64,000 nucleotides of DNA from Asterias rubens (Eukaryota). How positions within the stretch are numbered: position 1 is the stretch's first letter; every line of letters starts with the position of its first letter. The position numbers were made by a program, and so were the translations under genes. This document shows positions 4,001-60,532 of the stretch, one piece after another. The stretch is from the NCBI RefSeq assembly GCF_902459465.1, contig NC_047070.1:4030001-4094000 (forward strand), read 5' to 3'. The notes below the pieces were generated by a model. It searched no databases. It had not been told where the DNA came from and worked only from the letters and a program-made list of their open reading frames with translations.

Positions 4001-7000
4001 TCCTGTCCTCTGGTCTTGTCCACACTGGTCCCTGGTCCTGTCCTCACTGGTCCCTGGTCTTGGCCTCCCTAGCCCCTTGTCTTGGTGTCTCCGGCCTCTT
4101 GCCTCCCCTTTCCTGTCCTCTGGTCTTGTCCTCACTGGTCCCTGGTCCTGTCCTCACTGGTCCCTGGTCCTGTCCTCACTGGTCCCTGGTCCTGTCCTCA
4201 CTGGTCCCTGGTCCTGTCCTCACTGGTCCCTGGTCTTGGCCTCCCTAGCCCCTGGTCTTGGTGTCTCCGGCCTCTTGCCTCCCCTTTCCTGTCCTCTGGT
4301 CTTGTCCTCACTGGTCCCTGGTCCTGTCCTCACTGGTCCCTGGTCCTGTCCTCACTGGTCCCTGGTCCTGTCCTCACTGGTCCCTGGTCCTGTCCTCACT
4401 GGTCCCTGGTCTTGGCCTCCCTAGCCCCTGGTCTTGGCCTCCCTGGCTCTGGGCCCAATTTCATAAAGCCGGTAAGCACAAAATAAATTGCTGATCAGAG
4501 ACAAATATTACTTGGCCTTGAAGCCAAAAGTCCATACATAAACATTGTTGTGACTGGTGCCCCACCGATTTTTATGGCTAGCATAGAAATTTGCTGAGCA
4601 GTATTTTTATATGGGCCCTGAACTCACTCGTGCGTTGTCTTGGCCTCTCTGACCCTTGGTACTAGCTGTCCTGGCCCCTGGTCTTGACCTCTCTGACCCC
4701 TGGTTTTGTCCTCCCTGGCCATTGGCTTAAGTGCCACAGTTGAGGTATTGCAAGGTATCAATACCAGAAAAATAGCCAAATGGGAAATACCCCGCTCATC
4801 TAAACATATCTTGACATCACATTCTTGATTTCCAGATTGTTTCGGAAACTGGTGTTGCCTCTATATGCAAGAAGTGCATTGCTCCCAAGCCACCCCGAAC
4901 CCACCACTGTAGCATCTGTAATAAATGCATTCTGAAGATGGATCATCACTGTCGTATCCTTTGAAAATATCACTGTCGTATAGTTTGAAATATCTCTGAA
5001 AATGCACACAACTGCAAAGTAAACCTCAGGAATTTGGGGTCAGCCCTTTCTCTTTTGCCATGTGGATTGTAGGACTTTCGTACACAGGGTTTGAATTGCC
5101 AAAAAATCTTCACTGTACCACAGGTCTTCGTTGGCCTCTCTTAAACTGTAGAGGGCACATTGTGAATTCTGTACGGAAAAGTTTCATTAAAGAAAGAGGC
5201 ACATCCTTTTCGTCTGGCAACTCACACCTGTTATCTCCATGTAATTCCTTTTCCAAACAGTAGACTTAATTGGATAAAGCACAAACCAGTTGGGCCGCTG
5301 CCCCAGGCAGATTAAACTGCTCATCCGGCCATAAAGGTTAATAACCCAATTAAATTAATGTCAACTTAAACCTCAGTGAAAAAGATCTGTACTTTCTGAT
5401 TCTGTTGTGGCCACACTCGGAAATTCTTTAATGGAGTTTTAATTCCCATAATGAGCAAAATCAATTGTAATCAAAAAGCAAATTCCTTAAAGTTAATCTA
5501 CACAGCATGGGTCAACAATTGCATAGGACACTATAACCACCGCTATTTCATGTTGTTCTGCATCTACATGTGGATTGGAACACTCTATGTTTGCATATCG
5601 GCATGGCCGCTGTTCCGCCAGGAGTTCTTCGACCCAAAGGTGAGATTTCGGCCGTGTCCGGATTTACGGCTACAGCTATTGCTACGACTGTTACTAAGGG
5701 TGTTGCTGAGAACGTCCTATACTTCATTGCATAGTGCTGATACCAGCCTTAGCCGAAGCTGTAGCCACCAATTCAAACACAGCCTATTACATAATAATAA
5801 TAATAATAATAATAATATCAAAGTCTTATATAGCGCATGTATCTACCAAACAAGGTACTCAAGGCCCTGAGTATAATACAAACTTTCAGAAAGATAGGTA
5901 ATTGCAGTGATGAATTTTGAGACCCGATTATTTAGCACCTTATAATGGTTTACAATGCGCATACAGCAGCCACAGCCAGGAACGACGGGGCGAACCCCTT
6001 CTCTTTTCGAAAAGTGCACTGGGTTCTTTAACATGCGGTACACAACACATGGGACCAACGGCTTTACATCCCATCCGAAGGACGAAGCAATGGTTAAGTG
6101 TCTTGCTTAAGGACACAAGTGTCATGGCTGGGGATTCGAACCCACACTCTGCTGATCAGAAACACCAGAGTTTGAATTCGGTGCTCTTAACCGCTCGGCC
6201 ACGACACTTCCAGTGGAAAAGTTTTTGTTCTTTTCTGTTTCCATTTGTCTTGTCTCAACATTTGTAGTTTACTTTTCTAGGCTGTCTTCTACAAGCCTTG
6301 ACTTAATCTGACAGCCCCATGCTCTCTTTATTTTGGTCACCATAGGTTAACTCTTTTCTTTGCACTATGTGGCGTGTCATGGCCGAGCGGTTAAGAGCAC
6401 CGGATTCAAGCTCTGGTGTTTGATCAGCAGAGTGTGGGTTCGAATCCCGGTCGTGACACTTGCTACATAAAATTGGGGAGGTAGTGCTTTCTGCTCTACC
6501 GGCTAGGCTTCGAATTGATGATACCCAAGCCTACATCCGTATGGACTGTAAAAGGGGTAACCCTGTTTCAGCCCAAGGAGTAGGTGGCAACAGCCTCTGG
6601 ACAAAAAATAATTGTAGCCCATACCTTGAAGTGGCCTTCAGGCCTTGTGTGTTTGGCGACTTGCATAAAAAATTAAAAAAAATTATCCATTCTTATTATT
6701 TTGCTTATTTATGTAAAATTTTGTACGTATGTGTTATTTTGAGAAAAGTAGTATGAAATAAATGTTGGCTTTGACCAGAAAATTGAATTTAATAAACAAT
6801 ATAGTTGAGGGGGCCCACACCAGACAAACTGTTTCTTCAAGGACCCTTTTTTACTTCCATGCTTTGTCGTGATTTATTTTCCCCAGCATGTTGTATTTTT
6901 ATTTGCCTCTTTCCTGTAAATATTGTTCATTTTGCAGTGTTTGGATTTGGAAATAATGTTCAGTTAACCCTTTTATCAATCCTTTCTTGAAAAGTTTGCA

Positions 7001-27000: not shown

Positions 27001-30000
27001 AATCAAACCATGTAATTAGCATTTACAGGAAACTCGGTGAATAATGTGTTGATTGCAGGTCTTTTTGAAAAAGCCTACTTTACATAATCTGATTAAGAAC
27101 ATTTTCCTGCTAAGGAAGATTTGTCTTTGCTAAGCTAAGCAAATTATCTGGGCCCAGTTGGTTTGGTTTGTTCACATTTTCAACACATGGGCTTGCCATA
27201 ATATGCTTCATACCACATAAAGATGATATCACACTCAAGAGTGTACATTGTACATAGAGTGGGGCACGAGTTGCATCAATGTAAACTTTACAGAATTTTG
27301 GCTTGTAACCAGTTTCTGTTAAGCATGATTTTCTGTGCTAAGCAAGTTGTTAATGCCTATTGGCTTTATGAAATAGACCGATCCATTAAGCTTCGCCCCA
27401 TTGCGTATTGACCAATCACAACGCAACAAAGGTCCGACAAAGGTCCGACATGCAACGCGCGCAGCAGAGTTGTGCAGAAAGGCTTTGGAGAGCCCCACGT
27501 GTTCTTGCTCACACTTGCGTTGTGGGTTGAGCCTACTGGATCGGTCTATTGGGCCCGAATCTAATGCATACCTTAAAGTTTTACACTAAAATTCCTCACT
27601 TAGTTTTAAGACTTCCAAATTACGTGAATTGTTTTTTCGTTTGCAGATCTTCTTCCCTGAGTGCATTCCGGCGCTACAATTCTCTCCCCAGTCCACAAGC
27701 TGCCCCTGATCCCCCAGTCTTCTTGTTATCCAAAGAAATAAAAAGTGAAGAGGGCTCAAATGGTTGCTTAGCGACGGAGGTTGATGAAAAGGAGTGTCAA
27801 AGAAAGAGAGCAGAGACGATCATGTGGGAAGCGTGTAATGACCAAGAAAATATTGATGTTCAGGTAGTTACATTATCAATATCGGGTTTCTACCCCAGAT
27901 TTTTTTTTTTTTTTTACGTCGGGAATTCTTGACCAAAAATTAGAATGTTTGGCCTAAATAAATAAGGTCACATTTGTTTTAAAAGCTCTACTCATTTAAA
28001 ACCACTCTAAAAACACTTATTTAAATCCATCTAGTCTATTCAGATTCTGCTATTTCATCCCACTTTTATTTGTAATTTGTTGTTATCCTACACTAATGTA
28101 ACAGATGCAAAGTGGTCCCTTTGTTTCCTGCCATAGTGAAGAATATTTTGAAAAGAAAAAAAGATTGCCAAAACAACTGTTTAAAATTTGATACAGTCCA
28201 TTAAAAAAAAACATGCATATAAATTGGCAATGTTTAAAATCTGTGGTTTGCTTTTTCCTCCAAATGCAGCGGAAAATTGAAACCTTCAAAACAGGCCGGC
28301 CCAGGCAGATTTCTTTCATCGAGGCTGGAACATTCGAAGCCACAACTAAAGAGAGACCAATCTCTGCTCCTGCTTCCTTGGTAAGTTTGACATCTTCATG
28401 TTTCACCCACAGTCTGGCAGAAATGCATGACTCAGATTGAGTTTTAGTTCCTCATCAATAGTTGGACTCTAGAAACGTCTTACGTGTAAGTTACTAAGAT
28501 GATTGATCACTCGGTACTGTTGTCAGTTTTTACATTGTAGTAATTTTTGACTTTCTGCTTCTTCTCACCCATACACTCTTGATTTGTTGAGATGTAGAAG
28601 GAGCCAACAGCTTTATTTCACGTACTGCATCTCTTTGCAACTCCTTGTCTGGTGCATGTTTCCTTCCATCATATGTGGTTGAGATGTAGAAGGAGCCAAC
28701 AGCTTTGTTTCACGTACTGCAACTTTTTGCAACTCCTTGTCTGGTGCATGTTTCCTTCCATCATATGTGGTTGAGATGTAGAAGAAGCCAACAGCTTTAT
28801 TTCACGTACTGCATCTCTTTGCAACTCCTTGTCTGGTGCATGTTTCCTTCCATCATATGTGGTTGAGATGTAGAAGGAGCCAACAGCTTTATTCCACGTA
28901 CTGCATCTCTTTGCAACTCCTTGTCTGGTGCATGTTTCCTTCCATCATATGTGGTTGAGATGTAGAAGGAGCCAACAGCTTTATTCCACGTACTGCATCT
29001 CTTTGCAACTCCTTGCCTGGTACATGTTTCCTTCCATCATATGATCTAGACTTTCCCGCTAAGTCCCTTGAACAAAAACAAAAAGAAGTTTAGTGGGAAT
29101 CAAACTTATATATGCTGAACTTTGTCCTGATGTTTTCTTTTTCTGTGTTAGCTTGAGCAGGCAGCGAGACCACAGACGACCGTACTCAACTCCCCTGTCA
29201 AGCTTCAACACTGCCGCCTCGTCAGCAGCAACGAAGATGAGGAAGATGGTTTTACTGAACTCTTCATGGATTCAAATGAGGTGAGCCAATCAAACATCTC
29301 CTTTTACTGAAGTCTGTTTGGAATTCAAATCTGTAAAGCCAATCAAGTGTATCCTTTTTTTCTGAAATCGTCATGGGTTCAAATCTGCTAAGCCAATCAT
29401 GCGTCTTCTTTTCATTTTGCCATTTTCATTTTGCAAAGGGCACTTCAATTGGAAAATCTTGAAGGTAGTGGGAAACTTTTGAAGGGGCACCAAGGCGAAG
29501 ACCAGGGGCAACGGAGGCCTAGCCTCCATGTAATGGCCTGCTTTGAACAACAGCTTTCAGTTGTGTAAAGTGTTTCCCCCTTGAATGGTCAAAAATGCAA
29601 TCACCAGTGTCTGTTATGTCCACAAAATTCAATACAGAAAGGATTTAACCTTCATACTTTTTGTGACCATGTAAAATTTGTGAAGTTTCTGAATTGCATT
29701 TTGTACAGATTACTAATTCTAGACATTCTTGTCACAGGCCTCAGAATCGGCTGTACCCGGGAGTCTGTGCAGCCTCCTCAGCGCCCCCATGGTCATCTCA
29801 CCGCCTACCCCATCCTCTGACCACGCCCTTCGTGACCTCGACTGCAACACTTTAGATGACACCCCGAATGGTCCCAAATGTCGAAGAACAATCTTCAAAG
29901 TCCCGAGCCAACCCGTGATGAGAAGGTCATCCTTCTTAAAGCGGGCAGATCGACCGCGGGACACCCCAAGCCCAGTTCAGAGTAAAAGATACAGGAGTAG

Positions 30001-33000
30001 TTCAGATACCCTCGCGCCTGAACTTGATAGAGAATTAGATACACAGATATATCAGGTATGGATATCACACGAGATATTCTTGGTTACATGAGGCAGTGCT
30101 GTAATCTATATTAACTAGTTTATTTTTATTATTATTAATTTTTTTTTTTTTGGGGGGGGGGGGGGAGAAACGATTGATGCACGAATCATTTTGGTTGCTC
30201 AAAATTCAAATTTTCAATAAAGAAGAGTTGACACTGTTTTCAGGTGAAACCTTTGGAGACTTTTGTTTTCTCTTTCTTTAAAGGCAGTGGACACTATTGG
30301 TAATTGTCAAAGATTAGTCTTCACAGTTGGTGTATCTCAACATATGCATAAAATAACAAACCTGTGAAAATGTCTGCTCAATCGGTCGTCGAAGTTGCGA
30401 GATAATTATGCAAGAAAAAACACCCTTGTCACACCATGTCGTGTGCTTTCTATGCTTGATTTCGAGACCTCAAATTCTAAACTTGAGATCTCGAAATCAA
30501 ATTCGTGGAAAATTACTTCTTTCTCGAAAACTACGTCACTTCAGAGGGAGCTGTTTCTCACAATGTTTTATACTATCAACCTCTCCGCATTACTTGTAAT
30601 CAAGAAAGGTTTTATGATGATAATTAGTTGTAGTAATTACCAATAGTGTCCACTGCCTTTAAAGTTTTGCCTTTGAGCATCACATTATGACAAAAATCGA
30701 TCTATAGCGTTACCTTTGTGATAAATGTATTGTGTATGATGTTACGTGTTCAACGTTACATAATCCTGTGATTGTTTTTAAACCATTGGCTGTGAAAACT
30801 ATTCTTCTTCTTCATTATCTGCTCTGATTCAACTGATTTATGTTTAAACAAAAATTGTATTTCACTGTGTCCTGTTTTCCCCTCCCTGCTGACTACTCCA
30901 GGACTATTTTTTGTATTGCATTTTGGTTTTTGTTGTTGTTAAGGTACTGTTTTCCTCTGCCGACATCAGTTTTTTCATTGTTTACTGTTTTCCCTGCTAA
31001 CTCCCCAGGACTATTTTATGTAATGCATTTTGAATTTTACTCTTAACTGTGTAACTGCTAAATTCATAGTTTATAGTTTGCATTTTGTATTTTATTGTTG
31101 TCGTATGTTTAAAAATGTGGTTTTCGTTTGCAAATGATTTGGTATAAATGGTGTTTTGTAGGCTTATAACTTTTAAAATAGACCACCTTTCTAGATCACA
31201 TGATGATGTTTACAAAAAAGGCCATAGAGCCTTGAAACGAATTTGTACACAGCTCAAAGAAATCATGAAACTGTTCATTATTTTTAGATGTCTATTGCAT
31301 GCACTGTATGATTTGTATCAGCTTTGGATACGAAGAAAGGGGGCAGGCACATCTAAAAACTTGTTCGGCTGATTCTTTTTTTAAATTCTTTATTTATTTG
31401 CTTATTACGACAAAAAAAGGAAATCTTCTCAATTCTTTTGCTTGCAAGAACCATTCCTAATTTCGTTGACCTGCTTTTCAAAGCAGGAAACTTTGCTGAA
31501 ATATTGTCTACTAAGCTAAAATGAGTAGGGGAGCAGCCATAAAGGGTACATGTAACTTGGTATTTTAGGCTGGTAATCTTATTCCCGTAACCATAATTAT
31601 TTTAGGCGTAGGGTGTAGAAAGTAGGCCTACTTTTTTGTAAACAACGTATATATGAAATATTTCTTTTGATCTGTTATACTGACTTGACGGTACATCTCC
31701 TTTTTGCAGAGTCCGAGGGCGCGGCGTCTTGGGCGATCCCATTCTATGGATGAGGGGCGGGACTATCATCAGAAAGTGGCCATGGCTTTAAATTGTGACC
31801 ATACTGTGCTCACTGGTGACCGCACAAAGGTAGGCTAGAAAGGGAGTTAGAGGTAAAATGTAGAAGGGGGGGGGGTAAATCTAGCAATGAGAAATTCAGA
31901 TTTTGATCTGAATTCAGATTGAAAAAAAAAGGCTTTTATTTAGGTTTGTTGTGATTTGTGAGGAGTTTTTCCTGATTTGAGGATCTCTCCCTGTGCCTTC
32001 TGTTTTTCTTGTATTCAATAAACAACTCAACTTTAATACCCCTTTTCTCAGTTTTATTCTCTCGCATTTCTTGTTGTTTCTACTTCCACAACTTTTGAAA
32101 CAAAGGTTTGGTTTTAGCAGTAATAAAACATAGATTGCTCTGCTCAATAAAAAAATAAAATTTTCCTGGGTCGACAACTGACTCATCTTGCTTGATCGCA
32201 TCATATGTAATATGCACAAGTAGGTCAGACCTTGTATTCAATTAATTTTTTAGAAGAGCCAAGAAAATATCTTGTTGGTACAATACGATAATGTTGAGTC
32301 ATAATTCTTTTCAGCCGGACGCCTTACCGCTGTGTGATGGTAAACACCGCGACTTAAAGAGCATCACACCAGAGACGATGTGTAGAGTCTTAAGGTCAGA
32401 GTTCCCAAAGGTCAAAGAGCACTTCATCCTTGACTGTCGATACCCCTACGAGTACAAAGGCGGACACATCAAGGTCAGATTTGTAATATCCTCAAAAATA
32501 GTAAATGCAGGCCTGATACTGACCTGCAGGCAATGGTCATGGCCTTGGTGCCCTTGAAATGCTATAGTAGAGATTTACAGTCTCCTCATAGGGTGCCCTT
32601 TATCAAGGAAAATTGCATTGGTGCCCTTGCCCTTTCAAAACGTTGATGTCCTGACGTTTCGACCCTAGCAGAATCTTTCTGGAAGGCCTTCTGCTAAGGT
32701 GAAAAACGTTGGGACATTTACTATTTATACCACAGGTCCTTTTGTTTTGTGAGCATTTTGCAGTAGCTATTGTTTTGTTTTCATCTTAATATCTTGCTAA
32801 CAATGTTTTTACTGTAAGCTATTTTGAAGTTTTAGCATCTAGTTTGTGTACATTTTTACTCTTCATCAGCTAAAACGTCTGTTGTCATTTTAAGAAATGC
32901 TCGTTCTGCTATGATCAAGATTTTATTATTTTTATAATGTAATCCTTTCATAATTCGGGTAGCCATTATTTGCTAATAGCTTGCTTCCACCAGTCCTTCA

Positions 33001-37268: not shown

Positions 37269-40200
37269 TAAAACTTTAAAAACATGTGCATTGGGTTCAG
37301 ATAGCCAGACTAAGTCGCTCCAAGCCGGAGACAATGTAGAAACTGGTTTTTGAAAATGTCCAAAACTTTTTTTTGCGACAACTTTTTATATTTTACAAAT
37401 TCAGATCAATGTAACCAAACTGATTGAGGCTAGAAGGAAAAGTCAGTCAGACCCCTCCTTAAGGTACTGCAGCCGATTTCACGAAACGCTAGGATGAATC
37501 CTAACTCGAGTTAGGATGAGTAACCCGTCCTAACTTAGGATGGGTTCAATGCGTCCTACGTATTTGAATACGGAACTTTACTAGTCCTAAGTCCTAAGAT
37601 TAATCCTAAGTTAGGAAGAGTTTGGTGAAATCGACGGCTAGACACGTTTGGTACAAATCAAAGACCAGTATTCTCACTTGGTGTAAGCCAATTGTTTATG
37701 CATACCTGTGAATATTTTGGCTCAATATTAGTCATCGAAGTTGCAAGAGAATAATGCAAAAAAAAAATCCCTTGTATGTTTTCAGATGTATAATAGGCTT
37801 CAGGCCTGAAGCCTTTTATTATTTGAGTGAGAAATTACCTCTCTCTCAAAAACTACATTATATCAGAGGGCGCCGTTTCTCACAAAGTGTTATACTACAA
37901 ACAGCTCTCCATTGCTTGTTACCAAGTAAGTTTTTATTTTGAATAATTACTGTGTCCAGTGCATTTAATAAAGACAGTATTCCTTATTGCTACTGCAGAT
38001 AGGGGACACAAACTGTGCACTTCAGGGAAATTGTACCATATTTTAATTTTAACAAGTTGTGGGAAAGTAATAAACATCTATGTCAAGATATTGATGAATT
38101 TAACTCATGAGTGTTGTTGTTACTGGTCTTTCATACACAATTTTGTGAAAAACTAAATATTTAAAATGTTTTGGGATTTTGTTTCTCCGTTCTTTTTTTG
38201 TCGGATGTGTCCACATTTTCTCTTCACTATCTAAGACTCGTGCTACCGTCGACTTAATCGTGTTGTTTAACCGCGGGATATGTTCCACCATACCTCTAGA
38301 GGGTTCAACTCAATACGGGTTACAGGGATACAGAACAGTTTCTGGCAGTGTAAGTACTTTATGTGACACCATATACATTGTACATAACATGACTACCTGG
38401 AGAAGTTTGAGATCGATGGGCCATCTGGGTCACGAGAAAATAGTGAAAAACAGATTACACATTTTTGTTAGACAGTGATTTCAAACAATGAATAAAACGC
38501 TCACTGAGCAATAACTCCAAACAGGAAATTAACTTTATTCACTTCTCATCAAGTATGACATTTCAGACAGAAATATTTCAAGAGATGTTTTCTACTATCA
38601 TCATCACTAGACCGTATAGACGATGTGACCTGTGACATCACATGTTTACAAAAGAGCCACAGAGCCTGGACTTCCTGCGGAGTGCAGGCACGATTTGTAC
38701 ACAGCCTAATAATGGAAAAAAAAAAAAAAATGTTAAATTTTATGGAGATTGCACTGTCTAATTCTTATCAAAACTTGTCCAACTTTTACTTTCAAAAATC
38801 TTGGATTTATGTGGAAATTATGACACAATTTACAAATTGAAATTTTTCCCATACCCTCCAAAGGTACAAGGTCACACTTATTGTAAACAAAGTTCACATG
38901 TCAATGCATGGTCTATAAGTTTGTGTTAATCTGTGATCTTATTCTTATAGGAGTTTTTTCCTTACCAATTATGACTTCTATGTTATGTGACTACAGCAGA
39001 ACTATGACTATTTTTGAATGTGAAGTACTGTCATCTGCTAAGATTTCGGTGATTGTCAAAGACCAATCTTCTCACAATTACTGTATCTCAACATATGCAT
39101 GAAATAACAAACCTGTGAAAATTTGAGCTCAATCGGTCATCGAAGTTACGAAAGCCAAAACACCCTTGTCACACGAAGTTGTTTGCTTTCTGCTTGATTC
39201 CGAGACGTCAAATTCTAAATCTGAGGTCTCGAAATCAAATTCGAGGAAAATTACTTATTTCTCGAAAACTGCATTACTTCAGAGGGAGCCGTTTCTCACA
39301 GTGTTTTCTACTATCAACCTCTCCCAATTACTCGTTACCAAGTAAGGTTTTATGCTAATAATTATTTTGAGTAATTACCAGTAGTGTCCACAGCCTATAT
39401 GCCTCAATTGGTATCCATCATTAATTTCGGAATAATCACCCCCAAATTAGCTAAACTAGAAGGTATGTTACCAACGTTTATTGAAAAATTACTCTCGAAG
39501 TTTTTTTGAAGTCTGGTCTAGACCATCTAGGAACATTTTCAAGATATATTTGCGGACGTTAGGGAAAATTGCAACCGACGATTCTTGGGACTACCCATCA
39601 GCTGGAGAAAGATTGCAAGTTCAAGAGTTAATAAATAATTTCCATTTAACCGAACCCCCCCCCCCGAGATTTCTGAATGTTTTGTGTATTTTTGAATAAT
39701 AGCACTTTGCACTGTATGCTATGGGAGTTTGTTTTCAGTATATGGTGCATTCAAACTCCATGTACAGCTACCGGCATAATCCATTTCTTAGTCGATATAA
39801 CCAAACAGTGCACTCATGTAGTGTCCGCCATACCACACAAAGCCATTGACTATAATCAGTCCTTACTCTATGCTATAATATTGTGTACTTGAGGCCACTC
39901 AACCGTGTTCGTGTTTTTTTTTTTGCTAAATTATTTATAGGTTCAAGGTTTCATAACTTTGTTTGTCCTTGTGGAGAGCTGGCAACACAGTCCGCCAACG
40001 CCGATTCGCAGCAAAGCGTGAAACGACAGCCGAGTGTCTATTGATCCGCACTACTTGATAGCCCCCGCCCCAAAAAATAACAAGCACACAACCAAACTTG
40101 CTTTATACTTGCTCAGCATGAATTGCTTTTCAATTCGTGTCACTCGGGTTGATTTAGGACAGTTTCATTGGTGGAGGAAGTTAATACAAATGACCTCACA

Positions 40201-41663
40201 GTATGTGTATTCAACGAAATCACGTTCTCACCATCCGGTTCGGGATCATTCACTCACCGGCTCGTGACTTGCAACCAGTTGAAGAAGGAAAAAACAAGAT
40301 TATTATAGCCTGCTGTGCGTAGTTAACACAATATCCAAAAGGTAGGTTTTTCTGTTAAAAAAGGGCAATGTTTACAGCCACTGATGGACACTATACTCAG
40401 AATAGCTGTTAGCTTACAAACTTGTTGGGAACGGGCAACGGAGTGCCGGTGATAGTAACTATCATGGAGGAATAAATCTTCCTCCATGATAGTATACAAC
40501 ATTGTGAGAAACGCTTACTCTGAATGTGACACGGTTGTTGAAAAAGAGGTAATTTCTCACTCCAATACTAAAACACTTCAGGCCCGAAGCCTTTTATAGG
40601 CATCTGAAAGCACACAATATTGTCCAACAGCCAAAGGTGTTTTGTTTATTTATTCTCTTGCAACTTCGATGACAAATTGAGTCAAATTTTCACAGATTTG
40701 TTAAAGACAGTGGGCACTATTGGTAATTGTCAAAGACCAGGCCTCTCATTTTGATGTATATCAACATGTATAAAATAACAAACCTGTAACAATTTGAGCT
40801 CGATTGCTAGTCGGAATTGTGAGATAATGAAAGAAAAAAACACCCATGTCACACGAAGTTGTGTGCTTCTTTAGATGGTTGATTTCGAAACCTCAAATTC
40901 TAAACTTGAGGTCTCGAAATCAAATTCGTAGAAAATTACTTCATACTCGAAACCTACGTCACTTCAGAGGAAGCTGTTTCTCACATTGTTTTATACTATG
41001 AACCTCTCCCCAGTACTCGTTACCAAGTGAGGTTTTATGCTGATGATTATTTTTACTAATTACCAATAGTGTCCACTGCCTTTAATGCATTATTGGGTTA
41101 CACCAAATGAGAATACTGGTCTTTGAAAATATAACCAAAGGTGTTGAGTGTTAACTCGATTGGTTTCAAGTTGTTAACAAAGATCATTTCAAAGTTTCAT
41201 AGGTAGATGCATGGATGTGAATGATTACAATTATCTCGACATTTTTTGTTTACACTTTCTTCCCGTTTTTATGGCAAAACAACTCTCTGAAACTCTCTAA
41301 AAATGTAGCTTTTCTAATTGGTTAGTTTTACCAATGAAAGGCCGATCTGCAAATTCGGACCGAACCTGTGCAGTGTGCGTCTTTAGGAGATAAGCGCATT
41401 TTTAGACGTGCACATTTTATGCTCATTTTCTCAAAAGAAAATATTATTAACATGGCTGCCTGTATTCATCGCTTCAAAATGATAACAACTTACAGTTTCT
41501 TTATATTTATTAACACCACATGAAACAATGTCACATGACTAAGCCTACCCCCGCTTCAGTCGGGTAATTTGTAGCACACGTAGTACACGTTTTTCATGAC
41601 TGCAAAATCTAATCTATATATAGGCCTAAACCTGTTTCTTTTTTCATATCATAGCCAACAAAG

Positions 41664-43650
41664 ATGAAGGTGCAAATAGCATGTATCCTTATTGTGGCGA
41701 TGCTGCTGATCATTCCTCCCACTGGTAAGAGAATGGCCTAGTCAGAACAATCAATAAACAATAAAGTGCTCGGTCAAAAATTTTAATTTACACGGGTGGT
41801 GTGATTATGATAGACACGAGTTTAGGCTAGTTTAATGACACAGGATAATATTGTACAGAAAGAAATTTCAGGGTACATTGGAGATGGCCTTGCTAAAGGG
41901 TAGGATAGAGGTGGTCATTCGTTGAGAGCGCCCTCCACTTCTTACTATAGTTCTTCCGAATTGTATTAGTTATTCAAAAAAGTACACGTCCATGACAGTC
42001 GCCCTTTTTCTGTCGTTTGTGGTATCGTATGCTATATGTTTGTTTGCCCCAAAAGGCGGCTACGTCACGATTTACTGCGTTTTTCTTGCACAAACGGACA
42101 CCTTACTCGCATTAGATAGATAGATATAACTGGTTCAATTCTTACAGATGGTTTCGGTTTGTGATATGTTACAGAGGTAAATGCCGGATTTGTACGAAGA
42201 CGTCGCACTTTTGTGGTCAAGAGGGAAGCAAAGCTCAATATGATAAACGGTATGAGTAAACCTTCAGGACACCCTTCTGAATCTGAATTATATTAGTCGA
42301 CAGAGAATCATAGAATGGAAGCATCACACCAACTTTTCTTAGAAGACAATAAAGAAAGACTCCACTTACTATAGTTCTTCCGAATTGTTATTTTGTACAA
42401 AGACTCCACTTACTATAGTTCTTCCGAATTGTATTAATAGTTATTCAAAAAAGTACACGTCCATGACAGTCGCCCTTTTGTTTTAAACGTGTGAAGAAAA
42501 CACCTATGGGGAAACCTACGCAGTCTCTATAAAGGGGACTGAAAAAACCCAATCTACATGCAAGGCTCCGGTCCAGGAATCGAACCGGGGTCCACAGAGG
42601 TTGAGGGCAGAAACACAGACCCCTGACCCAACCTGAGAAACAATACAACGGCACATTAAAAAACAACAACATTGATTTACAGTGTACTACAAGTGACCAA
42701 AACTCCCCGAGATTACCAAGTTTAAAACTATTGACTTATCTTAGAAACATACTCTCTAAATGCAAAAGAGTGAAAAGGCACTCTTTGAAGAGCCATAATG
42801 AGGGACAACTCTTTTTCCAGTGGTCTTCCAATCTTTTAAATTGAAGTGATTTATCACTCTGTCCTGGAGTGATACCCCTCTAAAATAGTGAAATAATCAC
42901 CACTTTGTTTTAAAGAGCAATTTATTTTGAGGGACAACCCGAAATGTAAAGAGTGGTGTTTTACACTCTTTCACATTTTTTTTAGGGAGTATAGTATAGT
43001 CCTAAATAATAGCTACATGCGTTTATTATTTAGAATGTGACTTTTGTGTCTTTATAAATTCAAAGACACTGGACACCTTTGGTAGTTGTCAAAGACCAGT
43101 CTTCCCACTTGGTGTATCACATGTACAAAATAACAAACCTGTGAAAATTTGAACTCAATTGGTCGTCGAAGTTGCGAGGTGGAAGAAAAACCACCCTTGT
43201 CATACAAAGTTGTGTGCTTTCAGATGCTTGATTTTGGGACCTCAACATCTAATTCTGAGGTATTGAAATCAAATTCGTGGAAAATTACTTCTTTCTAAAA
43301 AACTACGCAACTTCAGAGAGGGCCGTTTCTCACAATGTGTTATACTATCAACAGCTCTCCACTACTCGTTACCAAGTAAGTTTTTATGGCAACAATTATT
43401 TTGAGTATTATTACCAATAGTGTCCAGTGCCTTTACACCAGCATTACGTTGACGTAAACTAAGCGATGGCCCTATCCTTCGGGCCAAAGTATACAACAAA
43501 TACACATTAATTTGAGGAGCTTCAATATACCATGGATGAAAACAGCTTAATACTTTTCTTTCCTTCCTTTTTACAGATGAAGCTGATGCAGCTATCGATG
43601 TCAACAAGAAGTGGGTCGCAAATGACAAAGCGCCTATGGGCAGAAAGTAG
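41664..43650 (+). CDS. Small secreted peptide precursor, 69 aa, 3 coding exons, uncharacterised
   Basis: Exons 41664-41724, 42175-42249, 43577-43650 are all joined at phase 1 by GT-AG introns. Translation: MKVQIACILIVAMLLIIPPTEVNAGFVRRRRTFVVKREAKLNMINDEADAAIDVNKKWVANDKAPMGRK*. Kozak AAGATG follows an acceptor at 41654. The stop lies 3 nt before a donor (43654). A probable 3' UTR exon starts at 44476 with AATAAA at 44621. Confidence 0.72.
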
Positions 43651-45764
43651 CTGGTAAGTGATAGTTTAGTGCATTTTTGAAATACATCTCAGCACTAAAT
43701 TACATTAAAACTTTAGCATTGATATCATTCAACCGCCATCATAAAAGTAAACCAATGAAAACGGACAGATTTCTAAGCGAGCGCGGCAAACATAACAATT
43801 ATTGGCCCCAATGAACAAAACTTCATTTTGACATTCAAGCGAGGGCGCCCTACCTAAATGAGGTCAATAGATCAGCTTCCGATGGCAGTGACCCCTTAAA
43901 TCCCATCCAATAACACGAACTATGTTATGCCCCTTTAAAAACCACCATTGCTGTCGGCATGACCCCTGAGGAAAAAAAACCACCTGTGTTTCATCTTCTT
44001 AAAGTATGGATTATCTATCTATTCATCACCAACAATTTGCAGCAACTAAAGGCAGTGGACACTATTGGTAATTATTCAAAATGTTTATTAGCATAAAACG
44101 TTTCATGGTGACGAGTAATGGGGAGAGGTTGATGGTATAAAACATTGTGAGAAACGGCTCCCTCTGAAGTACCATAGTTTTCGAGAAAAAGTAATTTGAT
44201 TTTGAGAATTTGATTTTGAGACCTCAGATTTAGAACTTGAGGTCTCTAAATCAACCATCTAAACGCACATAACTTCGCGAAACAAGGGTGTGTTTTTTCT
44301 TTCATTGTTATCTCGCAAGTTTGATGACCGATTTGGCTCACAGGTTTGTTATTTTATGCATATGTTGAGATACACCAAATGTGAAGGCTAGTCTTTGACA
44401 TTTACGAATAGTGTCCACTGTCTTTAATGGAATATACAACTCAATTATTGATGCATTTTCCTTATTGCAATGCAGGTACGCTCAGCACAGACTTACTCTA
44501 TGATGATCGGTATCCCCTGGGATACATTCTTGTCATGTTAGTTGAGAGACGTATAAGATTGGAATGATCATCAGCAGAAAATACTAATTGGTATTCAACC
44601 TCGTAGATTAATAATTGATAAATAAATACTAATACATTTATGTTAAAGGCACTGGACACTATTGGTAATTACTCACAGTAATTGTTAGCAAAAACTTGAT
44701 AGTATAAAACATTGTGTATAAAACATGCAGTGTGAGAAACGGCTCCCTCTGAAGCACATTGTTTTTGAGAAAGAAGTAATCGCTCACTAAAATAATCGAA
44801 TTGAATATTGAGACCTCGGCTGAGGTTTTCGAATTCAAAGGTATCTGAAAGCACACAACTTGTGCTATAAAGGTTTCTTTTTCTTTTCATTATTCTCTCG
44901 CAACTTCGACCACCAACTGAGCCAAATTTGTTACGGGTTTGTTATTTTATGCATGTTGAGATACACCAAGTGAGAAGACTGGTCTTTGACAATTAACAAA
45001 GGTGTCCAGTGCAAAAGGAACATTACAGAATTGTTTTTTTTTTGTTTGCTAACGGAAAATTTGCTGACAGTGTAAGCACTTTATGCTATACATACACATA
45101 AATTGACAACCCTGTGGCAGTTTGAGACCGATAGGCCATCTGGGTTGCGAAAAAAAAGAGTGAAAAACCACCTATACATTTTGCATGACGTGGATTAAAA
45201 ACAAAAATGAATAAAACGGTCATTGAGCGATAAACTCCAAACGGAAAATTAGTTTCATTTATTTCAAATATATTATTTCAGACAGAAAATTTCAATGGCT
45301 GTTTTTTTTAATAATCATCATCATTAGACCGTGTAAGTTTTATGTCAATCTGTTGTCTTAGACGATTTGTTTTCTTACCAAATTCTGTAATGTTCCTTTA
45401 ATAACTGATAAATAAATATGAAATGTGTCAACATTTAAACCAATGCGTTGCGTGAAATCTAAACGTGATATTGTTTCAAGCTGATCTCTTTAGATTCCTG
45501 ATTGGAATAATATGTTTATTTTCAGTTGATAATAAAGATTTTGTACGAAGAAGTAAAAAATGGATCGTTTGATTTATTTGTAATATTGATGTCTGATTGT
45601 GCGGGCTCAATTCTGCACACAACACACACAAAAAAGAATTCGCGAAAACCTGTTATTAGTGTTAAAACGGTGGGGGTCCCGTATTAATTTTCCTTTTTTT
45701 ATTGCCACTTAGGAGCAATGAACATTGATTGCAGCAGGTGTCATAGCACTAGACACATTCGGTA

Positions 45765-47470: not shown

Positions 47471-48715
47471 ATGGATGACATCCAAGTTGGCAACTCTTCC
47501 ACTGAGATACAGCCGAGTGACTTTCAAATAGACGTGGGTACTTACGTGTACCGTGTGATGAGCACCGTTACTATTCTGTTGCTCGGAGTGCCTGGAAACT
47601 CTCTCATTCTCCGCGTGTATTGGTCAAAGGCGATCACGACAAGCACACACATTCTGGTCATGTCGTTGGCTCTGATGGATCTCGCCATCTGTTTATGTCA
47701 GGTCTCTGATCTTTTGTCCGATGTTGCGCAAATAACTGGTCAAATAAATAAGCACATCATGTTTGAGATAATGGGATGGATTGAGGACACCTGCATTAGT
47801 TCTTCTGTTGGTCTCACCGTAATCATTGCACTGGATCGTTACGACTGTATCTGCCGTCCGCAACGGCGATTTTTTAATGCGACAAGAGGAAAGGCGGCAG
47901 CTTTCATTTCATTTCTGGTCGCTTTATCTTCAACAACTCCAAAATTCATCAAGGTATTTATGAACACTGACCTTCCCACATTGGAACAAGTAACGTTGGG
48001 AACTTATCTAGCCTATTTATTAATTGCATTTGTGGTCATCATCATTTCTTATTCTAGGGTCTACATGACAATCCGAAAGCATGTCAAAATTGGTTTGCCG
48101 TCCAAGATGGCCAAAGCCGATGTTAGCCCTCCGAAGATCGACCAACAACCAAACCCTAACCAACAAACAAACCCTGCTATAACTGCTGCACCAATAAAAC
48201 CAGAACCAGCTTTACTAACTGTTCCTGACAAATCGGGCAATATGTCACTTCAGAAGATATCAGTAGCATCTATTTCTACCTCCTTGGTAACATCATCATC
48301 GACAAGCGAAACTAACAAGGCGGCCTCAGAGGGTAGCAGTGAGAACAACGTCCACCCCACTACGTCACAGATGGGCACGAGTGGGTCCAAAGTTTCAGAT
48401 CAAGCGCACCGTGACAACAGAGGGCGTCGTGTGAAAACAACTGATGCCCCTTCTCTGCAGCGGAAGACCACCAGAATGTTGTTGATTACCAGTGTGGTGT
48501 TAATGGTGACCTGGCTGCCATATTGTGTTTACCTCTGTGTCTATATTGCTGGCCTTAATGGGTTGAGTACCAGCCCAATAATCGTAGATATACTAAGTCA
48601 GTTTTTTTCTGTTTTGTACGTGAACAATTTCTGTAACCCCATTATTTATGGACTTGCAAATAGACGGTTTCGAAAAGACTGTGTGGAACTGCTACGCAAT
48701 CTTCACATTTGTTAG
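47471..48715 (+). CDS. Intronless orphan class A (rhodopsin-like) GPCR, 414 aa
   Basis: Seven hydrophobic segments with GVPGN (TM1), LALMD (TM2), DRY (TM3), WLPY (TM6), NPIIY (TM7) and helix 8 NRRFRKD. It has an N-terminal NSS sequon and a long Ser/Thr-rich third intracellular loop. Confidence 0.92.
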   Translation: MDDIQVGNSSTEIQPSDFQIDVGTYVYRVMSTVTILLLGVPGNSLILRVYWSKAITTSTHILVMSLALMDLAICLCQVSDLLSDVAQITGQINKHIMFEIMGWIEDTCISSSVGLTVIIALDRYDCICRPQRRFFNATRGKAAAFISFLVALSSTTPKFIKVFMNTDLPTLEQVTLGTYLAYLLIAFVVIIISYSRVYMTIRKHVKIGLPSKMAKADVSPPKIDQQPNPNQQTNPAITAAPIKPEPALLTVPDKSGNMSLQKISVASISTSLVTSSSTSETNKAASEGSSENNVHPTTSQMGTSGSKVSDQAHRDNRGRRVKTTDAPSLQRKTTRMLLITSVVLMVTWLPYCVYLCVYIAGLNGLSTSPIIVDILSQFFSVLYVNNFCNPIIYGLANRRFRKDCVELLRNLHIC

Positions 48716-56755: not shown

Positions 56756-59724
56756 TTATTTTTTTGATAAAGAGAACTAGAAAATCTTTGAATTATTTTG
56801 CCTAGATTGATATTTGGAATCAGCCACTGTCCATTGCCCAAATTCACTGAGCTGCTTAAGCAGATTATTTTGCTTCACAGTTCCTTGCTTAGCAGAAATG
56901 GGCAGGGTACCAGTCACAAATTGTACACGTGACATGGCATTTTGGCTGGTAACCTTAATCTGCTTAGCATAATTGAGGTCAATTGAAGTGCCATAGTTTT
57001 CGAGAAAGAAGTAATTTTCTACGAATTTGATTTCGAGACCTCAAGTTTAGAACTTGAGGTCTCAAAATCAACTATTTAAATGCACACAACTTCGTGTGAC
57101 AAGGGTGTTTTTTCTTTCATTATTATCTCGCAAGTTCGATGACCGATTGAGCTTAAATTTTCACAGGTTTATTATTTTATGCATCTGTTGAGATACACCA
57201 ACTGTGAAGGGTAGTCTTTGACAATTACCAATAGTGTGCACTGCCTTTAAAGGAACACGTTGCCTTGGATCGGTCGAGTTGGTCTTTGAAAAGCGTTTGT
57301 AACCGTTTGTTATAAAATGCATTTGATTAGAAAGATATTTTAAAAGTAGAATACAATGATCCACACAAGTATCACTCGAAATTGCGTGGTTTTTCAATTG
57401 ACTCCCATAAATGGCCGACCGTGTTAGTTCGCAAAGTAAAAGGATATACACCGCACAATCTGGAGTGTTAACATTTGCACCATTAGACGTTGTAACATAA
57501 TTATAGATACCGAAAAGAACCCCAACATTTTACACAATGCGTAAATCTAACACTAATTTCTGGCAGCACAATTACATTGGTGTTGTTTTAACACCCTATA
57601 ATGGTAATTTAGATTCTCTCTTGTGTATCTAGTAATGTGACACTTGTGACAATAGCCATGTGGTCAAATTTAGCACCACAGTTGTTGCAGTGTACTAATA
57701 AACAAACCAGTATAGCTGCTCAAAACCGTAGTCATTCGATTCAATTTTAATCCAAACTCACATTTATTTCCATACCTCACACGGAAATTCAAAACGACAC
57801 ATAAAAAAATTAGTTAAAGGCAGTGGACACTATTGGTAATTATACTGTCTGTTATCATTTGAATGACAGCTTACCTCTTTCTCAAAAACTATACGTTAAC
57901 TTCAGAGGGAGGCGTTTCTCACAATGTGGTATCATTAACAGCTCTCCATTACTCGCTACCAAGTATTAGTTTTTATGCTTACAAATATGTTTGAGTACAT
58001 TACCAAAAGTGTCCACTGCCTTTAATGTGAGATCAAGTTGAACCTATAATTGTATTATTACATAAACGCTCTGGGATAAAATAAAAAAATAACGTAGTTA
58101 AAAATCAACCTATCCTTACCACTTTCTCTTCTTGTATCTACACCAAGAAATTCCCGCAGAGGTTGAACGAAGCTCCTCATATTATTATTATTATCATAAC
58201 TCAATTTTTATTTAAGAGTTAGCCTATATCATAAAAAGTACAATCGGTCAGCTCTCCTAGACCCCATCCCAAAATGCAACAACAATTATATTTTATGAGA
58301 GTGTAAAGCGCTAAACACTTTTGGTTGTCTTGTGTCATTTAGCAGAGTTCTTGTTTTTTTTTGGCGCCAGGAGTGTTATCATTGACAGACATGGCGCACT
58401 AGAAATTTTCAACATTATTATCGAACTATTCCACCCATTTTTTTAATTATCAATTTGCAATATTTGAAATGTAAAATTGTGGCTCTAATAGCGTTCTACC
58501 CAACCTCCAATTTAATCATGCAAAGTTGTTGTAAACGAGGACAGTTTTTAAATAAACCATTCTATCTATAACTATTCTATATTATCTATTATTTTGTATC
58601 GCGTTGAGCGCATTTTTTCAATTTATCGACTGAAAAGTGTTAAGGCCTTGACTTTTTTTCTGAGCAGCTGCTGGCGGTACCCAAAATTCCCCTGACAAAA
58701 GATGGCGTATTTTTATCTAAAGAGCTGTGAAAAGAAATATTATGGGCTATTGCTCCATCTTCAAGCCTCATTTGTTACATTGATTGAAGATAAGTTTTTC
58801 TTTCACGATGTCCACGCTCGCCGGATGTCCTGTGATCGAGGGCAGTGGTCCGTGGTATGAATATTATACTCAGAGAATACCAATCAATTAAAGGCATTGG
58901 ACACGTTTGATAATTGTCAAAGACCAGAGTTCCTTATAAAGAAAAATTACCAAGTTTGTATGAAAAGGTGCATTGGAAATGCCATTGCATTTGACGCCCT
59001 TCAAAATTAACATAAAACACCGAGCAACGCGTCACAATGTGAACTTTGGGTGTGGAGATTTTGTTTAGTCTGTTCTGCTTGGTTTGCACGATTTTCAAGG
59101 GACGGCTTTGCCTTTCATCTTTTGACTGGCGAAAAATTCCTTTGTTGATACTGGACCTCTTTGTACTGTTGATTCCACCGACGTCATGTTTCAAATTTCG
59201 TTTTGATGGAGTAAACATTAGATGGCACCTCACAGCATTACTTGATAGTCACATGGACACCTTTGGTATTTGTCAAAGACCAGTCTTCTCATCACGTGGT
59301 GTATTCCAACATATGCATAAAATAACAAACCTGTGAAAATTTGGGCTCAATTGAGGTCATCGCAATTGCAAGAGAATAAAGAAAGAAAACACCATTGTTG
59401 CATATACTTTGTATGCTTTCAGATGCATAATAAAAAGGCTTGATCTGAAGTATTTTATTATTTGAGGGAGGAATTTACCTCTTTCAAAAACCCCTATACG
59501 TTACTTCAGAGGGAGCCGTTTCTCACAATGATTTATACTATCAACAGCTCTCCAATAGCCCTTTTGAGGTATGGAGTAAACTGTTTGGTTTAGGCGTTTA
59601 CAGACAGATTTACCAAAACTCAATAGTGTCAAATGAATGTGTTCACCATATCTCAAAATGGCTTATTGCTCATTTCCAAATAAGTTTTTTTGCCAACATT
59701 CGTAATTACCAGTATAGTGTCCAA

Positions 59725-60532
59725 TAATGGGGCGGACACAATGGTTTGTAGGACACAAAGGGGCGGACACAATAGGGCAGACACAATAGTTTGTAGGACA
59801 CAATGGGTCGGACACAATGGTTCTACGGACACATTGGGCCGGACACAATGGTTTGTAGGACACAATGGGTCGGACACAACGGTTTGTAGGACACAATGGG
59901 ACGGACACAATGGTTTGTAGGACACAATGGGTCGGACACAATGGTTTGTAGGACACAATGGGTCGGACACAATGGTTTGTAGGACACAATGGGTCGGACA
60001 CAATGGTTTGTAGGACATAATGGGTCGGACACAATGGTTTGTAGGACACAATGGGGCGGACACAATGGTTTGTAGGACACATTGGGTTGGACACAATGGT
60101 TCTACGGACACAATGGGGCGGACACAATGGGGCGGACACAATGGTTTGTAGGACACAACGGGTCGGACACAATGGTTTGTAGGACACAATGGGTCGGACA
60201 CAATGGTTTGTAGGACATAATGGGTCGGACACAATGGTTTGTAGGACACAATGGGGCGGACACAATGGTTTGTAGGACACATTGGGTTGGACACAATGGT
60301 TCTACGGACACAATGGGGCGGACACAATGGGGCGGACACAATGGTTTGTAGGACACATTGGGTCGGACACAATGGTTCTACGGACACAATGGGGCGGACA
60401 CAATGGTTTGTAGGACACAATGGGTCGGACACAATGGTTTGTAGGACATAATGGGTCGGACACAATGGTTCTACGGACACAATGGGGCGGACACAATGGT
60501 TATACGGACACAATGGGGCGGACACAATGGTT
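59725..60532. repeat. Minisatellite of GGACACAATGG cores in alternating 17- and 14-bp subunits (31-bp period)
   Basis: GGACACAATGGTTTGTA + GGACACAATGGGTC repeated about 25 times, with GGGC and TTCTAC variants. Confidence 0.95.

What the first reader, a model, noticed from the sequence alone, without database searches (positions are those of the whole stretch)
40250..44630. Hidden multi-exon gene for a small secreted cationic/amidated peptide precursor
Seen: three tiny phase-1 exons splice to a 69-aa ORF with a textbook signal peptide (MK, hydrophobic core, PPTEVNA|G). Next come a +6 segment GFVRRRRTFVVKR, whose four Arg use four different codons, an acidic spacer (EAKLNMINDEADAAIDVN) and KK-WVANDKAPM-G-RK. 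The stop is 3 nt before the last junction (NMD-safe). A likely non-coding first-exon donor is at 40341 and a last exon with AATAAA at 44476-44626. Established: Gly plus dibasic residues is the amidation signal, KR/KK/RRRR are convertase sites, and signal + cationic + anionic propiece is a common host-defence peptide layout. Inference: an undescribed antimicrobial or signalling peptide gene yielding a poly-Arg N-terminal peptide and/or WVANDKAPM-amide. I do not recognise it as any described echinoderm neuropeptide.
Basis: partly seen in the sequence, partly recalled or inferred. Interest (0 to 1): 0.8.

Follow-up and report, generated by a model that had tools for sequence, protein, structure and literature searches.

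The report
Unlisted starfish gene for small amidated peptide
A real, spliced and well-expressed five-exon starfish gene encodes a 69-residue secreted precursor with no detectable relatives, which most likely yields a small amidated signalling peptide (WVANDKAPM-NH2) whose function is untested.

Summary
One 423-nt contig from a public run (X1) joins all five predicted exons through four GT..AG introns at exactly the predicted junctions. It ends 23 nt after the AATAAA signal. Two runs of a closely related organism show the first two joints, and a fourth run shows the last.

The first ATG of the 467-nt mRNA opens a 69-codon frame (138 of 20,000 shuffles do as well). The product has a textbook signal peptide, a basic segment (RRRR, KR), an acidic spacer and KK-WVANDKAPM-G-RK at the C-terminus.

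The gene is single-copy in a genome that I infer to be Asterias rubens. No homologue turned up in 5.8 billion proteins (word search) or 1.84 billion representatives (full HMMER). No searched paper text holds its sequence.

The best reading is an orphan prohormone-type precursor giving WVANDKAPM-NH2. The antimicrobial reading is weaker but not excluded. Tissue, translation and processing were not shown.

The idea that the orphan GPCR 2.8 kb downstream is its receptor gained no support. That GPCR belongs to a large expansion, and its paralogue loci carry no peptide gene.

The scan noted this stretch once before (s1-151269).

Verdict: a new member of a known kind, of moderate interest.

The parts
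40271..40341 (+). Exon 1, non-coding 5' UTR. The 5' end is a minimum: the X3 contig reaches at least 71 nt upstream of the donor. Donor is AAG|GTAGGT.
   Evidence: Joint 40341|41655 in X1, X2 and X3. No ATG in this exon.
41655..41724 (+). Exon 2: 9 nt of 5' UTR, then start ATG at 41664 and codons 1-20 plus the first base of codon 21 (MKVQIACILIVAMLLIIPPT). This is the signal-peptide n- and h-regions. Phase-1 donor CTG|GTAAGA.
   Evidence: Joints on both sides in X1 and X3.
42175..42249 (+). Exon 3 (75 nt, phase 1-1). It holds the end of the signal peptide (EVNA, to 42185), the basic segment GFVRRRRTFVVKR (42186-42224) and the start of the acidic spacer.
   Evidence: Joints 41724|42175 and 42249|43577. 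Organism B differs at 42211 (F>Y) and 42217 (V>A).
43577..43653 (+). Exon 4. It holds the rest of the acidic spacer, KK (43606-43611), WVANDKAPM (43612-43638), Gly (43639-43641), RK (43642-43647), stop TAG (43648-43650) and 3 nt of 3' UTR.
   Evidence: Joints 42249|43577 (X1) and 43653|44476 (X1, X5).
44476..44649 (+). Exon 5, 3' UTR, with AATAAA at 44621-44626. The transcript contig ends at 44649.
   Evidence: X1 contig piece 44475-44649 with no mismatches (table 8). The stretch is held whole by 7 transcriptome-sized runs of organism A from 5 studies.
40342..41654 (+). Intron 1 (1313 nt), holding one copy of a ~385-nt repeat with terminal inverted repeats (40701-41085).
41725..42174 (+). Intron 2 (450 nt, phase 1).
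42250..43576 (+). Intron 3 (1327 nt, phase 1), holding one repeat copy (43062-43436).
43654..44475 (+). Intron 4 (822 nt, in the 3' UTR), holding one inverted repeat copy (44047-44427).

Best explanation
This is a genuine single-copy protein-coding gene of a starfish, inferred to be Asterias rubens. Its 467-nt mRNA encodes a 69-residue preproprotein of the prohormone or neuropeptide-precursor type.

Shown:
- The five exons are spliced as predicted.
- The transcript is abundant in at least one run, and also occurs in a sister organism.
- The first ATG opens the frame.
- The N-terminus has the n/h/c layout of a signal peptide: MK, a 15-residue hydrophobic core, then PPTEVNA with V at -3 and A at -1.

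Inferred:
- Signal peptidase cuts after Ala24.
- Subtilisin-like convertases cut at RRRR, KR and KK.
- A carboxypeptidase removes the C-terminal R-K.
- Peptidylglycine alpha-amidating monooxygenase converts Gly67 to an amide.
- The product is WVANDKAPM-NH2 (monoisotopic mass 1029.507), secreted as a signalling peptide.
- By-products are an acidic 18-mer spacer and small basic N-terminal fragments.

Its receptor and physiological role are unknown.
For: - All four junctions are on one contig at depth 3832, and are repeated in three further runs from two organisms.
- The joined form is absent from the genome.
- A first-ATG ORF this long occurs in only 0.7% of shuffles, and the start context is good.
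- No Rfam family lies in the introns, so it is not an obvious snoRNA or miRNA host transcript.
- The coding exons seem better kept than the UTRs between organisms A and B. There are 2 listed differences in 213 coding nt against 8 in 166 UTR nt (Fisher p=0.024). X3 holds about 70% as many words of the coding stretch as X1, but only 14% of the 3' exon.
- No difference is listed in the exon that encodes the amidated peptide.
- The layout meets the criteria used to call starfish neuropeptide precursors: signal peptide, basic cleavage sites and a C-terminal Gly (PMC4772807).
- X3 and X4 are two runs of one sample and one study of 2025, from a close relative. That pattern matches the published Asterias amurensis nerve-cord data set (two runs, one BioSample; PMC12236018). 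If the match is right, the transcript is present in nerve cord. The run ids are coded, so this is circumstantial.
Against: - There is no peptide-level or translation evidence.
- The tissue of the runs is hidden.
- No orthologue was found beyond the near-identical sister organism, so deep conservation of the frame is untested.
- The only two coding differences seen are both non-synonymous.
- KK and a terminal G-R-K are less canonical than G-K-R.
- The gene is not among the 40 precursors reported from the A. rubens radial-nerve transcriptome. That study's de novo screen looked for Gly-Lys-Arg-flanked peptides.
- The 9-mer resembles no known neuropeptide family.
- SignalP was not available. The signal-peptide call rests on hydropathy and the -3/-1 rule.
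Confidence: 0.5

Rival explanations
1. It is a host-defence precursor. The bioactive product is the cationic N-terminal peptide (GFVRRRRTFVV, with or without KR), kept harmless by the acidic spacer. The short amidated C-terminal peptide is an accessory chain, as in sea-urchin centrocins.
For: - The segment after the signal peptide carries +6 and the spacer -4.
- Centrocin precursors of sea urchins have the same order of parts: signal, prosequence, cationic heavy chain, interchain spacer, a short light chain and a C-terminal Gly-Arg, with proven amidation in EeCentrocin 1 (PMC4805251).
- Basic pairs can survive processing in starfish: ArBN keeps an internal RR (PMC12002301).
- The species differences fall in this segment, as expected for fast-evolving immune peptides.
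Against: - The cationic piece is only 11-13 residues long.
- RRRR and KR are optimal convertase sites.
- The pro-region has no Cys, so a centrocin-like disulfide-linked dimer is impossible.
- There is no sequence similarity to any protein.
- There is no evidence of immune-cell or induced expression.
Confidence: 0.17
2. It is a secreted small protein or peptide with another role, for example a tissue-specific secretion or a pheromone-like or digestive or adhesive gland product. It is either not processed at the basic sites or is processed differently.
For: The signal peptide and high transcript abundance are compatible. It is absent from the nerve-cord-based catalogue of 2016. One RNA-sized run of the same organism holds none of the 3' exon (X16), which suggests restricted expression.
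Against: A peptide bounded by KK and G-RK at the very C-terminus is the specific signature of an amidated regulated-secretion product. A 45-residue Cys-free pro-region is unlikely to be a folded protein.
Confidence: 0.18
3. It is a young, lineage-restricted transcript whose ORF is translated little or not at all and has no selected peptide function. The peptide-like features would then be fortuitous.
For: There is no homologue anywhere and no paralogue. The introns are full of mobile-element copies. The species differences are 2 non-synonymous and 0 synonymous.
Against: - The ORF length is unlikely by chance (0.7%).
- On top of that come a full signal-peptide layout, phase-1 symmetric exons and a stop placed just before the last junction.
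- The coding exons seem better conserved than the UTRs.
- The transcript is very abundant.
Confidence: 0.1

Closest known systems
Orphan candidate neuropeptide precursors of Asterias rubens (Arnp21-Arnp25; Semmens et al. 2016, PMC4772807)
   Same: These are small secreted precursors (83-157 residues) with a signal peptide and dibasic sites. Some have a C-terminal Gly for amidation. They have no relatives outside echinoderms and were called on the same three criteria.
   Different: This precursor is shorter (69 residues). None of the listed precursors has this length. I could not fetch their sequences to compare. Its terminal motif is G-R-K rather than G-K-R. Expression in nerve is not shown. 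The peptide WVANDKAPM-NH2 is not reported in any searched text.
Bombesin/GRP-type peptides (vertebrate ...W-A-x-G-H-x-M-NH2, quoted from memory; starfish ArBN)
   Same: It is a short amidated peptide with Trp and a C-terminal Met-amide. The gene has phase-1 introns.
   Different: The starfish bombesin-type peptide is already known and unrelated: EPRRNYNRVFGPTY-NH2, from a 102-residue precursor (PMC12002301). Here the peptide is at the C-terminus, no intron interrupts it, and the G-H-x-M core is absent.
Centrocins (sea-urchin antimicrobial heterodimers; PMC4805251)
   Same: The order of parts is the same: signal peptide, cationic chain, spacer, then a short chain ending in Gly plus a basic residue, with amidation.
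   Different: Centrocins have a 30-residue prosequence, a 30-32-residue heavy chain and one Cys in each chain for the disulfide. Here the basic piece is 13 residues, there is no Cys after the signal peptide, and there is no sequence similarity.

Membership tests
Prohormone / neuropeptide precursor (generic class) | N-terminal signal peptide | tested here: met
   MK, then a 15-residue hydrophobic core (9-residue Kyte-Doolittle means up to 3.64), then PPTEVNA with V at -3 and A at -1. SignalP itself was not available.
Prohormone / neuropeptide precursor (generic class) | Candidate peptide bounded by basic convertase sites | tested here: met
   KK precedes WVANDKAPM and G-R-K-stop follows it. RRRR and KR lie upstream.
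Prohormone / neuropeptide precursor (generic class) | C-terminal Gly as amide donor | tested here: met
   Gly67 (43639-43641) is followed by R-K and the stop codon.
Prohormone / neuropeptide precursor (generic class) | Expression in neurons or endocrine cells | tested here: inconclusive
   Spliced contigs occur in several runs, but their tissues are coded. The metadata pattern of X3 and X4 matches the A. amurensis nerve-cord study; that is only circumstantial.
Prohormone / neuropeptide precursor (generic class) | Mature peptide detected; bioactivity or a receptor known | not testable with these tools
   This needs mass spectrometry and bioassays.
Bombesin/GRP type | C-terminal W-A-x-G-H-x-M-NH2-like core (recalled from memory), with the peptide directly behind the signal peptide and split by a phase-1 intron | tested here: not met
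   The peptide sits at the C-terminus of the precursor, within one exon, and has no G-H-x-M core. The A. rubens bombesin-type precursor is a different gene.
Centrocin-type echinoderm antimicrobial peptides | Two chains joined by a disulfide; heavy chain of about 30 residues | tested here: not met
   There is no Cys after the signal peptide and the basic piece is 13 residues. Family features are from PMC4805251.
Myoinhibitory peptide / allatostatin-B type | W-(x6)-W-NH2 (recalled from memory) | tested here: not met
   The peptide is W-(x7)-M-NH2. This is a resemblance only.
Published A. rubens neuropeptide precursor set (40 precursors, 2016) | Identity with a listed precursor | tested here: inconclusive
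   None of the Arnp precursors has 69 residues, and no searched text holds the sequence. The supplement search lacked a working positive control, so it proves nothing.

The most novel reading that the evidence does not exclude
The gene is a lineage-restricted, possibly de novo born, peptide-hormone gene of Asterias. Its product WVANDKAPM-NH2 would be the ligand of the lineage-specific orphan rhodopsin-type GPCR that lies 2.8 kb downstream on the same strand (47471-48715). That would make a physically linked, newly evolved ligand-receptor pair.
Probability: 0.04. Interest if true: 0.8.

Novelty: new member of a known kind. Interest (0 to 1): 0.42.

Why it matters
Asterias rubens is the main experimental model for echinoderm neuropeptide biology, and its peptide catalogue is used to reconstruct neuropeptide evolution in deuterostomes.

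A well-expressed, single-copy precursor with no relatives would add a candidate signalling peptide to that catalogue. It can be tested at once, because the mass is known and the peptide is trivial to synthesise. It would also be an example of a taxonomically restricted secreted-peptide gene.

It also shows that tiny multi-exon ORFs of under 70 codons can be recovered from raw sequence and confirmed with public read data.

Tried and rejected
- **Homologues.** The word-based search of 5.8 billion proteins found nothing. The exact-sequence look-up found nothing. The full phmmer search of 1.84 billion representatives gave 0 hits at E<=0.001. Pfam gave no match. The word-searched library does hold RefSeq proteins of A. 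rubens, A. amurensis, Patiria miniata and Acanthaster planci. However, the window's own GPCR was not listed there at 100%. The window's own proteins may therefore be withheld, so a missing self-hit says nothing about the genome's annotation.
- **Paralogues.** Only the three exons themselves match in the whole genome. A permissive tblastn against the loci of the GPCR paralogues gave only noise.
- **Literature.** No paper text holds any of four sequence strings. There are no 'Arnp26-31' names. Supplement searches of three neuropeptide papers were negative, but known peptides used as positive controls were not found either. These searches are therefore uninformative.
- **Bombesin-type identity.** Rejected.
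- **snoRNA or miRNA host gene.** No Rfam family matches, apart from one chance-level plant miRNA hit outside the gene. No tRNA was found.
The GPCR belongs to an expansion with at least 378 candidate loci. Homology with its closest paralogue loci (C5, C10, C2) begins only at about 46535, so the peptide gene is outside the duplicated unit. There is no support, and also no disproof.
- **31-mer share as a measure of neutral divergence.** I computed it and dropped it. DNA-sized runs of organism A itself hold only 0.26-0.41 of the words, so the share reflects coverage as much as divergence.
Full report
**1. The observation**

- The coding exons are 41664-41724, 42175-42249 and 43577-43653.
- They join through two phase-1 introns into a 69-codon frame that ends at TAG 43648-43650, 3 nt before the donor at 43653.
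- The four arginines use CGA, AGA, CGT and CGC.
- All four introns have GT..AG ends, and the acceptors have polypyrimidine tracts.

**2. Is it transcribed and spliced as proposed?**

Yes. A run search with 41600-43700 listed transcriptome-sized runs that hold about a tenth of the words, roughly the exon share of that stretch.

Four of these runs were laid on 40100-44800.
- One 423-nt contig of X1 (depth 3832) carries all four joints: 40341|41655, 41724|42175, 42249|43577 and 43653|44476.
- That contig continues without a mismatch to 44649, 23 nt after the AATAAA at 44621-44626.
- X2 and X3 (organism B) carry joints 1 and 2. X3 reaches at least 71 nt into exon 1.
- X5 carries joint 4.

The genome holds these exons only separately and only at this locus. 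The joined form must therefore be cDNA, not a retrocopy.

The 3' exon alone is held whole by seven transcriptome-sized runs of organism A from five studies. One run of similar size lacks it.

**3. Is the frame more than chance?**

- The 467-nt mRNA has no ATG before 41664.
- The start context is ACAAAGATGA, and the frame is closed upstream.
- A first-ATG frame this long arises in 138 of 20,000 shuffles.
- The N-terminus has the n/h/c layout of a signal peptide, with V at -3 and A at -1 before Gly25. SignalP was not available.
- No Rfam family lies in the introns, so it is not an evident small-RNA host transcript.

Organism B differs at two coding positions, 42211 (Phe33 to Tyr) and 42217 (Val35 to Ala). 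Both are in the basic segment, and both occur in two independent runs.

No difference is listed in the exon for the amidated peptide. The UTR exons show 8 mismatches in 166 nt, plus gaps (Fisher p=0.024). Only 14% of the 3' exon words survive in X3. This suggests constraint on the coding part. The numbers are small, and the difference table is truncated.

**4. Organism**

- The assembly has 417.6 Mb in 150 contigs.
- Contigs C5 and C2 have exactly the lengths (22,602,731 and 25,660,236) recorded for contigs that encode NCBI 'Asterias rubens' proteins.
- I therefore take the genome to be Asterias rubens. Organism B is a close congener.
- X3 and X4 are two runs of one sample and one study, released in 2025. 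This matches the published A. amurensis nerve-cord data set (two runs, one BioSample; PMC12236018).
- If that match is right, the transcript is present in nerve cord. The ids are coded, so this stays circumstantial.

**5. Relatives**

- None was found in the word-based search of 5.8 billion proteins, the exact look-up, the full HMMER search of 1.84 billion representatives or Pfam.
- The gene has no paralogue in its own genome.
- The word-searched library does contain the annotated proteomes of four starfish species. No annotated protein of A. amurensis, Patiria or Acanthaster therefore resembles it.
- The window's own proteins seem to be withheld, since its own GPCR was not listed. Whether this genome's annotation calls the gene cannot be told.

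**6. Literature**

- No searched text contains the sequence.
- None of the Arnp precursors described from the A. rubens radial-nerve transcriptome has 69 residues.
- That study's de novo screen looked for peptides flanked by Gly-Lys-Arg. This precursor lacks that motif, so it could have been passed over.
- The starfish bombesin-type peptide is a different molecule.
- Supplement searches failed their positive control and are discarded.

**7. Mechanism**

The shown steps are transcription, splicing, polyadenylation near 44649 and an open frame from the first ATG.

The inferred steps come from established knowledge of the regulated secretory pathway:
- signal-peptide cleavage after Ala24;
- convertase cleavage at RRRR, KR and KK;
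- carboxypeptidase trimming of R-K;
- amidation of Met66 at the expense of Gly67.

The result would be WVANDKAPM-NH2 (1029.507 Da), an acidic 18-mer and small basic fragments.

The host-defence alternative gains some colour from sea-urchin centrocins, whose precursors have the same order of parts and a terminal Gly-Arg. It also gains from the fact that ArBN keeps an internal RR. Against it, the basic piece is very short, it consists largely of convertase motifs, and there is no Cys for a two-chain peptide.

**8. Surroundings**

An intact intronless rhodopsin-type GPCR lies 2.8 kb downstream on the same strand (47471-48715; Pfam 7tm_1, E=2e-23).
- The GPCR is one of at least 378 candidate loci of a starfish expansion with inconsistent automatic names.
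- Its closest paralogue loci share homology with the window only from about 46535 onward, and carry no peptide-like exons.
- Adjacency is thus the only argument for a pair. I give it about 4%.

**9. Verdict**

The thing is a new, apparently orphan member of the well-known class of small secreted peptide precursors, in a species where such a candidate can be tested directly. It is not a new kind of system. Function, tissue and processing remain to be shown.

Noticed in passing
window 47471-48715 (+): Intact intronless 414-aa rhodopsin-type GPCR (DRY and NPxxY motifs, long third intracellular loop). It is a member of a large starfish expansion with at least 378 candidate loci in this genome. The nearest copies are on C5 (82%), C10:6016573 (74%, four stop codons, a pseudogene) and a tandem pair on C2 (60%). 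Automatic names of relatives disagree (CCK-, dopamine-, serotonin-, GPR84-like), so it is effectively an orphan.
   Followed up: partly
window 40701-41085, 43062-43436, 44047-44427, 44643-45012: Four copies (two in each orientation) of a ~385-nt element with terminal inverted repeats (…CACTGGACACTATTGGTAAT…) bordered by TTAA. It looks like a non-autonomous DNA transposon (MITE). It fills the introns and 3' flank of the gene and occurs in thousands of contigs of every run laid.
   Followed up: partly
window 41937-42011 and 42404-42482 (partial third copy 42352-42390): Near-identical (96-98%) ~75-nt direct repeats flank exon 3 (the basic-segment exon) about 470 nt apart. The sequence occurs nowhere else in the genome. 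It may be the footprint of a local duplication; its meaning is unknown.
   Followed up: partly
window 42211 and 42217: Organism B (two runs, two studies) has Phe33>Tyr and Val35>Ala in the basic segment. These are the only coding differences listed.
   Followed up: partly
window 29729-30091 (+) and 5451-5870 (+): Exon-sized ORFs match the M-phase inducer phosphatase family (Cdc25, Pfam PF06617, E=6e-9) and the DHHC palmitoyltransferase family (PF01529, E=1e-8). These are the upstream neighbour genes on the same strand.
   Followed up: no
window 59653-60525 (-): A 290-aa ORF with no significant Pfam match. Not examined further.
   Followed up: no
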